This document shows positions 50,460 to 50,813 of a stretch of DNA of 63,316 nt, one piece after another. The stretch's first letter is position 1; every line of letters begins with the position of its first letter. Under the pieces are notes generated by a model. That model ran no database searches, was not told where the DNA came from, and saw only the letters and a list, made by a program, of their open reading frames with translations. The position numbers were made by a program, and so were the translations under genes. Source of the DNA: Octopus bimaculoides (taxonomy: Eukaryota); contig NC_068981.1 of assembly GCF_001194135.2 (NCBI RefSeq), forward strand, positions 75,242,528 through 75,305,843. The letters run 5' to 3'.

Positions 50460-50813
50460 GCAGTTACTGTTAATACCTCGTTCAGAGATTTAACATTGCT
50501 TGTTTTCAGTTTTTTGATATCAGTGAATAATTTCACTGGAAAAACTTATATATATTTGCCAAGGGATGTCTTTTTCATCGAAGGTCGGCGATTGTCGTAC
50601 GCTGAAGAAGGGCAATAACCCTGAAACTCGAGTACGTACGTATCGTAGATCAAGATGGGAAGGATAACTTCCCTTGGCAAATACAGTAAGGACACAGAAG
50701 TGTGTCGATAACCAGCTGGAGGAGATGTCCTCCTGGGGCTAAAAGCAACAGTAACATCCACCCCTCTGGGGGCAGTTACTGTTAATACCTCGTTCAGAGA
50801 TTTAACATTGCTT
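50460..50813 (+). mobile_element. Retrozyme-like element: 312-bp structured non-coding unit plus 42-bp terminal redundancy
   Basis: Identical 42-mer at 50460-50501 and 50772-50813; internal hammerhead; extensive self-complementarity; no long ORF. Confidence 0.75.
50589..50645 (+). ncRNA. Type I hammerhead ribozyme (short helix III with palindromic loop)
   Basis: Helix I cgtacg 50596-50601 with 50635-50640; CUGAAGA 50602-50608; helix II aggg/ccct with loop caataa; GAAA 50623-50626; helix III AC-[UCGA]-GU; cleavage triplet GUA 50632-50634; distal helix I cgat/atcg beyond an internal bulge. Confidence 0.9.

What the first reader, a model, noticed from the sequence alone, without database searches (positions are those of the whole stretch)
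50460..50813. 312-bp unit with 42-bp terminal redundancy: possible genomic imprint of a retrozyme-like circular RNA
Seen in sequence: gcagttactgttaatacctcgttcagagatttaacattgctt is identical at 50460-50501 and 50772-50813 (period 312). The ends are not at the ribozyme cleavage site, so the unit is circularly permuted relative to a cleaved monomer. Established knowledge: non-LTR retrozymes (hammerhead-bearing units of a few hundred nt that yield circRNAs) are described in corals, mussels and salamanders. Inference: a 1.13-mer starting at an arbitrary point is what reverse transcription around a circular template would give, plausibly by a PLE or LINE RT such as those whose relics are abundant here. 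I cannot tell whether a cephalopod family of this kind has been reported.
Basis: partly seen in the sequence, partly recalled or inferred. Interest (0 to 1): 0.88.

Follow-up and report, generated by a model that had tools for sequence, protein, structure and literature searches.

The report
Hammerhead-ribozyme retroelement copy, slightly over unit length
This is a single 354-bp copy (1.13 units) of a small non-coding, ribozyme-carrying mobile element of the "retrozyme" kind already known from corals, mussels and salamanders, here in an octopus-like genome; it is a plausible new member of that group, but one copy cannot show that it was copied from an RNA circle.

Summary
A 42-nt exact direct repeat (50460-50501 and 50772-50813) brackets a 312-bp period, and the flanks diverge immediately on both sides.

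Inside lies one well-formed type I hammerhead (50596-50640, cleavage after A50634). It has the canonical metazoan retrozyme-type architecture. None was found in 300 shuffled windows.

The 312-nt unit folds far better than chance (-118.6 kcal/mol, z = -7.3). It is non-coding, 43% GC, and within the 170-400 nt retrozyme size range.

A hairpin spanning the unit end and the start of the 42-mer (p about 0.01) argues that the 42-mer belongs to the element and is not a target-site duplication.

So "retrozyme-like insert longer than one unit" is the best reading. The specific claim of a circular template is not testable here. A multimeric transcript, or Penelope-like internal initiation of reverse transcription (the known 30-40 bp "tail"), gives the same product.

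Other limits:
- The locus has only one ribozyme, so it cannot itself release a unit RNA.
- An assembly gap lies 24 nt upstream, and a collapsed tandem array cannot be excluded.
- The only relative found is a 75-nt homologous piece in Octopus sinensis.

The circle-template model is already published. Verdict: probable new member of a known kind, of modest interest.

The parts
50460..50771 (+). 312-nt unit (one period) of the hammerhead-bearing element
   Evidence: Period defined by the 42-nt exact repeat. GC 42.6% against 34% for the window. Linear MFE -118.6 kcal/mol, z = -7.3; circular MFE -115.6 with 68% of bases paired. More stable than all 200 random 312-nt window pieces. Longest ORF 71 aa, no protein homologues.
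50460..50501 (+). first copy of the 42-nt terminal redundancy (5' end of the insert)
   Evidence: Exact identity to 50772-50813. Bases 50463-50471 pair with 50747-50755 in the predicted fold.
50772..50813 (+). second copy of the 42-mer: the 3' overhang beyond one unit. Candidate equivalent of the PLE 'tail', or the start of a second turn or unit of the template.
   Evidence: Exact identity. The sequence after it (AGATATAT..., then a SINE from about 50820) is unrelated to the unit.
50596..50640 (+). type I hammerhead ribozyme. Helix I: 50596-50601 with 50635-50640 (CGTACG, 6 bp). Core: CUGAAGA 50602-50608. Helix II: 50609-50612 with 50619-50622 (A-U plus 3 G-C, loop CAAUAA). GAAA: 50623-50626. 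Helix III: A50626-U50633 and C50627-G50632, with palindromic loop UCGA. Cleavage after A50634 (GUA^C).
   Evidence: Own descriptor: one locus in the window, 0 in 300 block shuffles, and still the only one with a relaxed descriptor. Forcing the active fold costs only 5 kcal/mol over the MFE. Matches the architecture quoted in PMC4209133 (helix I 6 bp, helix II 4 bp, helix III 1-2 bp with a 2-4 nt palindromic loop). Rfam gives no hit, but it also misses clear oyster tandem hammerheads.
50553..50683 (+). long imperfect hairpin arm carrying the hammerhead. Outer stem 50553-50569 / 50667-50683 (17 nt, 94% complementary).
   Evidence: (I13).
50747..50783 (+). hairpin spanning the unit end and the start of the second 42-mer (AACAGTAAC / GTTACTGTT plus inner pairs, -17.7 kcal/mol)
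   Evidence: (I17). Reached by 31 of 3000 shuffled 42-mers and by 22 of 3000 random window 42-mers. This argues that the 42-mer is element sequence, not duplicated target.
50674..50748 (+). 75-nt module with a homologue in Octopus sinensis (L002 about 11020-11095, minus strand)
   Evidence: blastn 83% over 42 nt, E = 4e-5. Local alignment score 31 against a null maximum of 23.5. No extension on either side.
50436..50459 (.). left flank, the only 24 nt between the assembly gap and the element
   Evidence: Weak resemblance (17 of 22 nt) to the reverse complement of 50539-50560, p about 0.035. Not enough to call an inverted partial copy.
50150..50435 (.). assembly gap (286 N) next to the element. 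It may hide further or inverted copies.
   Evidence: PLE-type tandem and inverted insertions are known to break short-read assemblies (PMC8557442).
50820..51037 (+). unrelated SINE copy abutting the right end (context only)
   Evidence: Aligns with the copies at 48936-49341 and 51114-51332, and with O. sinensis L002 2915-3313 at about 82%. SINE homology starts after the 42-mer.

Best explanation
The 354 bp at 50460-50813 are a retro-inserted copy of a small, non-coding RNA element that carries a hammerhead. It is of the animal non-LTR retrozyme kind, meaning a non-autonomous partner of Penelope-like elements (PLEs). It was copied from a template longer than one 312-nt period.

Proposed life cycle:
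1. A source locus with at least two units is transcribed.
2. The weak-helix-III hammerheads pair as dimers (palindrome ACUCGAGU) and cut after GUA. [quoted passage not shown]
3. A host tRNA-type ligase closes these RNAs into highly base-paired circles.
4. A PLE reverse transcriptase/GIY-YIG endonuclease nicks AT-rich or microsatellite DNA and starts cDNA synthesis at an internal site of the RNA.
5. It copies one full period plus 42 nt before the product is integrated.

This particular locus has a single hammerhead, so it cannot release a unit RNA. It is a dead-end daughter copy.

Shown here: the repeat geometry, the hammerhead, the structured non-coding unit, that the 42-mer is probably element sequence, and PLE relics in the same genome. 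Inferred: transcription, cleavage, circularisation, which RT acted, and whether the template was a circle or a linear multimer.
For: Exact 42-nt redundancy at period 312 with sharp borders. Hammerhead with all core nucleotides, helix I 6 bp, helix II 4 bp, helix III 2 bp plus a palindromic loop: unique in the window and absent from 300 shuffles. The active fold is only 5 kcal/mol above the MFE. The helix III self-duplex is 8 bp, -12.7 kcal/mol. Fold z = -7.3 on the plus strand and weaker on the minus strand; 68% paired as a circle. Size, GC below 50%, absence of LTR/PBS/PPT and absence of ORFs match the published definition (PMC7229834). The junction hairpin links the 42-mer to the unit end. 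No ribozyme on the minus strand. An independent mollusc comparator: a 1.58-mer of a 349-bp oyster unit with two hammerheads of the same architecture, showing that over-unit partial multimers are a normal genomic form (L003). PLE relic pair in the window with an RT / HTH_animal / GIY-YIG family signature. Recently active Penelope families are reported in Octopus vulgaris (PMC13282606). A 75-nt homologue in O. sinensis shows the sequence is not private to this locus.
Against: Only one copy, and one ribozyme, is visible. No tandem array or second full copy was found, because no cephalopod DNA collection could be searched. Rfam covariance models do not recognise the hammerhead. The pair closing helix II next to the core is A-U rather than the usual G-C, which from my own knowledge may reduce activity. 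The nearest PLE relic is 31 kb away, so there is no physical association. The junction-hairpin argument has only p about 0.01. The O. sinensis homologue covers neither the ribozyme nor the 42-mer.
Confidence: 0.55

Rival explanations
1. A 270-bp SINE-like retroposon with an internal hammerhead (50502-50771) is flanked by a 42-bp target-site duplication. The staggered nicks of a PLE-type endonuclease would produce this. On this reading the 42-mer is host DNA and there is no terminal redundancy of the element.
For: The two 42-mers are 100% identical, as expected for a recent TSD. PLE endonucleases give TSDs of variable length (PMC8557442), and animal retrozyme TSDs are reported as larger than 4 bp (PMC7229834). 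By eye (not computed), the 42-mer looks AT-rich, closer to the 34% GC of the window than to the unit's core.
Against: The first 12 nt of the 42-mer form a hairpin (14 of 16 pairs) with the element's last 25 nt, and a 9-bp helix closes the whole fold; p about 0.01 for random 42-mers. No tRNA-like head was found. The next 45 nt of the undisputed element look equally AT-rich by eye, so composition does not discriminate.
Confidence: 0.15
2. The real locus is a longer tandem array (2.13, 3.13 ... units, therefore with two or more hammerheads) that the short-read assembly collapsed to the shortest path. On this reading it is a potentially active retrozyme source locus, not a dead monomer.
For: The window is a gap-rich scaffold with 15 N runs, one of them 24 nt from the element. 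Retrozymes are typically tandem (PMC7229834). PLE-type repeats are known to break short-read assemblies (PMC8557442). The unit is longer than typical short reads, so the copy number would be unresolvable.
Against: The assembled contig runs without N through both junctions and both 42-mers. If the assembly k-mer exceeded 42, a true 1.13-mer would give exactly this unambiguous path, whereas a longer array would give a cycle and contig breaks inside the unit. No continuation of the unit is seen beyond the SINE cluster or upstream of the gap.
Confidence: 0.15
3. The region is a fragment of a larger element. Examples would be the non-coding end (pseudo-LTR) of an autonomous PLE with an internal 42-nt repeat, or a composite repeat continuing into the gap. 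On this reading it is not a free-standing 312-nt unit.
For: PLE hammerheads sit in pseudo-LTRs, and retrozymes are related to pLTRs (bioRxiv 10.64898/2026.07.22.740005). The gap hides the upstream sequence. The O. sinensis homologous piece lies about 400 bp from a PLE relic gene.
Against: The hammerhead has the canonical retrozyme-type form (helix II 4 bp, helix I 6 bp). It does not have the PLE 'minimal' form (helix II 7-8 bp, helix I 4-5 bp; PMC4209133). No RT or EN coding relic lies within several kb. The left flank after the gap is unrelated to the unit end. A 312-nt period cannot come from a 3-4 kb unit.
Confidence: 0.08

Closest known systems
Animal non-LTR retrozymes (Cervera & de la Pena 2020, PMC7229834: coral, mussel, axolotl)
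   Same: Type I hammerhead with the canonical metazoan architecture. Unit of 312 nt, inside the 170-400 nt range. GC below 50%. No LTR, PBS, PPT or ORF. Very stable, highly self-paired predicted fold in which the ribozyme can still form. Co-occurrence with PLEs. Genomic copies longer than one unit.
   Different: Only 1.13 units and one ribozyme at this locus. Tandem arrays, copy number and circRNA are unverified. The host is a cephalopod, for which I found no retrozyme report. Helix II closes with A-U next to the core.
Oyster retrozyme-like partial dimer found here by accident (Ostrea edulis OX387705.1; L003 872 to 321, minus strand)
   Same: Mollusc. Same CUGAAGA core, helix I 6 bp, helix II 4 bp, 2-bp helix III with a palindromic 4-nt loop. 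Insert is a non-integer multimer (1.58 x 349 bp) whose ends are not at the cleavage site.
   Different: No sequence similarity outside the core. Two ribozymes are present, so that locus could release a unit RNA. Redundancy is 203 nt rather than 42 nt.
Penelope-like element insertions: pseudo-LTRs, partial tandems and the 30-40 bp 'tail' (PMC8557442; PMC11167929)
   Same: Insert exceeds one template period by a short stretch (42 nt) at the 3' side, no poly(A), AT-rich and microsatellite surroundings, a hammerhead on the sense strand. Internal RT initiation at two sites 30-40 nt apart would explain a 42-nt overhang.
   Different: No RT/EN ORF. Period is 312 nt rather than 3-4 kb. The hammerhead is canonical rather than PLE-minimal. 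The link between the 42-mer and the PLE 'tail' is my inference and was not tested.
Schistosoma Sm-alpha type SINE-like hammerhead retroposons and newt satellite 2 (named from my own knowledge and from citations in PMC4209133)
   Same: Short dispersed or tandem non-coding repeats carrying type I hammerheads with a weak helix III that act as dimers.
   Different: No tRNA-like head detected here. No sequence relationship was tested.

Membership tests
Hammerhead ribozyme, type I (canonical metazoan form) | Conserved core C3-U4-G5-A6-N7-G8-A9, G12-A13-A14, A15.1-U16.1, H17 | tested here: met
   CUGAAGA 50602-50608, GAAA 50623-50626, U50633, A50634.
Hammerhead ribozyme, type I (canonical metazoan form) | Three helices around the core: open helix I of about 6 bp, helix II of about 4 bp, helix III of 1-2 bp capped by a 2-4 nt palindromic loop (PMC4209133) | tested here: met
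   6 bp, 4 bp, and 2 bp plus UCGA. 0 such motifs in 300 shuffled windows.
Hammerhead ribozyme, type I (canonical metazoan form) | Recognition by the curated covariance models (Rfam hammerhead families) | tested here: not met
   No hit at gathering score or at E <= 10, even on 70 nt. The same search also misses two clear tandem oyster hammerheads, so this test is uninformative for this short-helix-III class.
Hammerhead ribozyme, type I (canonical metazoan form) | Self-cleavage activity | not testable with these tools
   Needs in vitro transcription of monomer and dimer constructs.
Animal non-LTR retrozyme | Short (about 150-450 bp) non-coding unit, GC below 50%, no LTR, PBS or PPT | tested here: met
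   312 nt, 42.6% GC, longest ORF 71 aa without homologues.
Animal non-LTR retrozyme | Tandem copies, so that each unit is flanked by two hammerheads | tested here: not met
   The assembled locus holds 1.13 units and one hammerhead. It could be a 'monomer derivative' as described in bioRxiv 10.64898/2026.07.22.740005, or a collapsed array. Source arrays elsewhere could not be searched.
Animal non-LTR retrozyme | Multi-copy family in the genome | tested here: inconclusive
   No second copy in 63 kb. One 75-nt homologue in 20 kb of O. sinensis. No cephalopod DNA collection was available.
Animal non-LTR retrozyme | Expressed as unit-length linear and circular RNA | not testable with these tools
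   No transcriptome access.
Animal non-LTR retrozyme | Stable, highly self-paired predicted structure of the unit RNA | tested here: met
   z = -7.3; 68% paired as a circle; beats 200 of 200 random window pieces.
Animal non-LTR retrozyme | Co-existence with autonomous PLEs in the host genome | tested here: met
   PLE relic pair 18393-18906 / 19239-19691, with homologues of RT + HTH_animal + GIY-YIG architecture. Active Penelope families are reported in O. vulgaris (PMC13282606).
Penelope-like element (autonomous copy or its pseudo-LTR) | Adjacent RT / GIY-YIG ORF, or terminal repeat of a 3-4 kb unit | tested here: not met
   No RT or EN relic was seen near the element. The repeat period is 312 nt.
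Penelope-like element (autonomous copy or its pseudo-LTR) | Minimal hammerhead (helix II 7-8 bp, helix I 4-5 bp, little or no helix III) | tested here: not met
   Helix II is 4 bp and helix I is 6 bp (definition in PMC4209133).
Viroid-like or HDV-like autonomous circular RNA replicon | Ribozymes in both polarities, and no DNA copy | tested here: not met
   Hammerhead on the plus strand only, and no other Rfam ribozyme on either strand. The sequence is integrated in host DNA between host repeats.
tRNA-derived SINE with hammerhead (Sm-alpha type) | tRNA-related pol III head | tested here: not met
   ARAGORN finds nothing in 48800-52300. A/B boxes were not searched separately.

The most novel reading that the evidence does not exclude
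This is a copy of a previously undescribed cephalopod retrozyme family. Its over-unit length and permuted ends would be a direct genomic footprint of reverse transcription running more than once around a ribozyme-made RNA circle. If other copies in octopod genomes show a fixed 3' end but many different permutation points and non-integer lengths, in the absence of long source arrays, that would be sequence-level evidence for rolling-circle reverse transcription of retrozyme circRNAs in animals. So far that step is only postulated.
Probability: 0.2. Interest if true: 0.55.

Novelty: new member of a known kind. Interest (0 to 1): 0.33.

Why it matters
If confirmed as a family, it would extend ribozyme-generated circRNA elements (retrozymes) to cephalopods. 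Those genomes are rich in SINEs and have recently active Penelope-like elements. A census of copy ends across long-read octopus assemblies could test how these elements are copied: from a circle, from a concatemer, or by PLE internal initiation with a 'tail'. As a single locus it has no evident function. It carries one ribozyme and cannot produce a circle by itself.

Tried and rejected
1. Rfam at gathering and at permissive thresholds gave no hammerhead. I calibrated this on oyster tandem hammerheads, which Rfam also misses, so I did not count the negative.
2. Looking for relatives through spurious ORFs: the 103-codon frame of the circularised minus strand was searched against 5.8 billion proteins, with no hits. 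This is weak evidence, because octopus raw contigs appear barely represented there. Only one O. sinensis protein was found even for the common PLE relic.
3. Pattern scans of the hammerhead. Metagenome contigs gave one unrelated eukaryotic contig, L001, with the same GAAACUCGAGUA helix III but different helices and flanks. Prokaryote genomes and viral contigs gave 0.
4. Literature string search for the sequences found only cloning primers.
5. Interrupted-array idea (the rest of a second unit displaced by the SINE insertions): no unit sequence lies downstream of the SINEs or upstream of the gap.
6. Inverted partial copy at the left flank: 17 of 22 nt, p about 0.035. Too weak.
7. Extending the O. 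sinensis homology into the ribozyme or the 42-mer: not significant.
8. The 42-mer as part of the neighbouring SINE: rejected, since SINE homology starts at about 50820.
9. A covariance model from four hammerheads was abandoned, because the MAFFT alignment put helix II out of register. A relaxed descriptor was used instead.
10. Pfam scan of the TE-relic ORFs returned nothing, even for P0001. The mariner and LINE calls therefore remain by eye.

Full report
**Observation**

The 42-mer GCAGTTACTGTTAATACCTCGTTCAGAGATTTAACATTGCTT occurs twice, exactly, at 50460-50501 and 50772-50813, 312 nt apart. Identity stops abruptly at both borders of both copies. The assembled structure is therefore 42 + 270 + 42, which is 354 bp or 1.13 periods. 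Tandem Repeats Finder reports no array there. Two points were not in the finding. A 286-N assembly gap ends 24 nt upstream of the first 42-mer. The unit also has no other copy in the 63-kb window.

**The ribozyme**

By eye and by a helix-aware descriptor there is one type I hammerhead, laid out as follows:
- Helix I: CGTACG (50596-50601) paired with CGTACG (50635-50640).
- Core: CUGAAGA (50602-50608).
- Helix II: AGGG/CCCU with loop CAAUAA.
- GAAA.
- Helix III: A-U plus C-G, capped by the palindromic loop UCGA.
- Cleavage after A50634 (GUA^C).

This is the only such motif in the window, even when one core mismatch and an imperfect helix I are allowed. None appeared in 300 block-shuffled windows.

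The architecture is the one described for canonical metazoan type I hammerheads: helix I 6 bp, helix II 4 bp, helix III 1-2 bp with a 2-4 nt palindromic loop, thought to work as dimers in tandem transcripts (PMC4209133). It is not the 'minimal' form of Penelope-like elements (PLEs), which has helix II of 7-8 bp. The palindrome ACUCGAGU can form an 8-bp intermolecular helix III (-12.7 kcal/mol).

Rfam does not report the motif at any threshold. It also misses two clear tandem hammerheads in an oyster locus, so I treat that negative as uninformative. One reservation, from my own knowledge: the helix II pair next to the core is A-U rather than the usual G-C.

**The unit**

- The 312-nt plus strand folds to -118.6 kcal/mol (z = -7.3). 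The minus strand folds to -99.4 kcal/mol (z = -5.6).
- As a circle the MFE is -115.6 kcal/mol with 68% of bases paired.
- No random 312-nt piece of the window folds as well (200 tried).
- The hammerhead sits at the tip of a long arm closed by a 17-nt stem. Forcing the catalytic fold costs only 5 kcal/mol.
- GC is 42.6%.
- The longest ORF is 71 aa, and a 103-codon circular frame has no protein relatives.
- No other ribozyme or tRNA-like part is present.

All of this fits the published description of animal non-LTR retrozymes: 170-400 nt, GC below 50%, highly self-paired, type I hammerhead (PMC7229834).

**Is the 42-mer element sequence or target?**

This decides between terminal redundancy and a 42-bp target-site duplication. 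A TSD is a serious rival, because PLE endonucleases give TSDs of variable length (PMC8557442).

The start of the 42-mer (GTTACTGTT) pairs with AACAGTAAC just before the unit end. In the genomic 1.13-mer this makes a hairpin with 14 of 16 pairs across the junction (50747-50783, -17.7 kcal/mol). In the unit RNA it closes the whole fold. Only about 1% of shuffled or random 42-mers do as well.

The 42-mer is also not part of the adjacent SINE, whose homology begins at about 50820. I therefore favour terminal redundancy, but a p of about 0.01 from one copy is not proof.

**What made a 1.13-mer?**

The ends are 175 nt away from the cleavage site, so a ribozyme-cleaved linear monomer was not the template. 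Three templates give the same product:
- A circle copied for more than one turn.
- An uncleaved multimeric transcript of a tandem array.
- A transcript starting inside one unit and primed in the next.

PLE biology offers a specific precedent. PLE insertions are partial tandems and often carry a 30-40 bp 'tail' at one end (PMC8557442). In vitro, a PLE enzyme starts reverse transcription at two internal sites, and the tail is the stretch between them (PMC11167929). A 42-nt overhang is the right size, but equating the two is my inference. Nothing in one copy can tell a circle from a concatemer.

**Relatives and context**

The window holds an inverted pair of PLE relics (18393-18906 on the minus strand, 19239-19691 on the plus strand) next to (TA)n runs and a gap. 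Their best match is an Octopus sinensis protein (52% identity). That protein's homologues combine RVT_1, HTH_animal and GIY-YIG domains. The pair lies 31 kb from the finding.

In 20 kb of O. sinensis DNA fetched around that gene (L002), a 75-nt stretch is significantly similar to unit positions 50674-50748. The similarity does not extend to the ribozyme or the 42-mer. It is the only relative I could find.

No cephalopod DNA collection was searchable. Scans of metagenomes, prokaryote genomes and viral contigs gave nothing useful.

By chance, an oyster locus fetched for its PLE-like gene (L003) contains a 552-bp insert. It is 1.58 copies of a 349-bp unit, with two hammerheads of the same architecture and ends away from the cleavage site. 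Non-integer multimers are therefore an ordinary genomic form of such elements in molluscs.

**Literature**

I found no report of retrozymes in cephalopods. The giant squid genome paper lists 235 Rfam hammerhead-1 hits (PMC6962438). O. vulgaris has 30 recently active Penelope families (PMC13282606). A 2026 preprint shows that vertebrate retrozymes are related to PLE pseudo-LTRs and that dispersed monomer copies are common (10.64898/2026.07.22.740005).

**Caveats**

The locus sits in a gap-rich short-read scaffold. A longer array collapsed to its shortest path cannot be excluded, nor can an inverted partial copy hidden in the gap. The left-flank resemblance to the reverse complement of the unit is weak (p about 0.035). 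No continuation of the unit lies beyond the SINE cluster or upstream of the gap.

**Verdict**

The best reading is a dead-end, slightly over-unit retro-copy of a retrozyme-type element: a probable new cephalopod member of a known kind. The circular-template inference is compatible with the data, but it is not distinguishable from the alternatives and is not novel as an idea. Interest is modest.

Noticed in passing
window 18393-18906 (-) and 19239-19691 (+): Head-to-head inverted pair of Penelope-like element relics (RT C-terminal region, linker and CxxC region, with frameshifts). Both stop at the same point next to (TA)n runs and a gap. Nucleotide identity to an O. sinensis copy annotated as gene LOC115230173 is 78%. 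This is the typical PLE inverted 5'-truncated arrangement.
   Followed up: partly
L003 321-872 (minus strand), Ostrea edulis OX387705.1: A 552-bp insert that is 1.58 copies of a 349-bp unit, with two canonical type I hammerheads 349 nt apart. It looks like an oyster retrozyme partial dimer. Rfam does not detect these hammerheads.
   Followed up: partly
L002 about 11020-11095 (minus strand), Octopus sinensis CM016860.1: A 75-nt stretch homologous to unit positions 50674-50748. It lies between microsatellites about 400 bp from a PLE relic gene. The two small hairpins of the unit are partly kept.
   Followed up: partly
L001 577-621, metagenome contig ERZ1740055 NODE-19508: A eukaryote-like contig with a hammerhead sharing the same GAAACUCGAGUA helix III/loop but with different helices I and II. 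Weak signs of a repeat of about 355 nt nearby.
   Followed up: no
window 48936-49341, 50820-51037, 51114-51332: Three copies of an octopus SINE of about 400 bp with an internal or 3' (CA)n run. Two of them are head-to-tail, immediately right of the finding. The family is about 82% identical to a copy in O. sinensis.
   Followed up: partly
whole window: The loose pattern CTGANGA-N(6-30)-GAAA-N(2-12)-GTH matches 12 times, against 1.75 expected (maximum 6 in shuffles). Only the match at 50602 has the helices of a hammerhead. The excess is unexplained and may reflect purine-rich low-complexity DNA.
   Followed up: partly
window 13245-13480 (-): The ORF fragment ...DNPRPHVSLMTLQKLREFGYEVLPHPAYYLDLSPPDNHF... 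looks by eye like the C-terminal part of a mariner/Tc1 transposase. Pfam gave no hit.
   Followed up: partly
window 55580-55876 (+): A 98-aa ORF resembling, by eye, the C-terminal region of a LINE reverse transcriptase. Pfam gave no hit.
   Followed up: partly
window 57398-57608 and 50026-50149: A long, very pure (TTC)n run (211 bp, 96-97% matches) and a (CTA)n run that abuts the gap left of the finding. There are 15 N gaps in 63 kb, many next to microsatellites.
   Followed up: no
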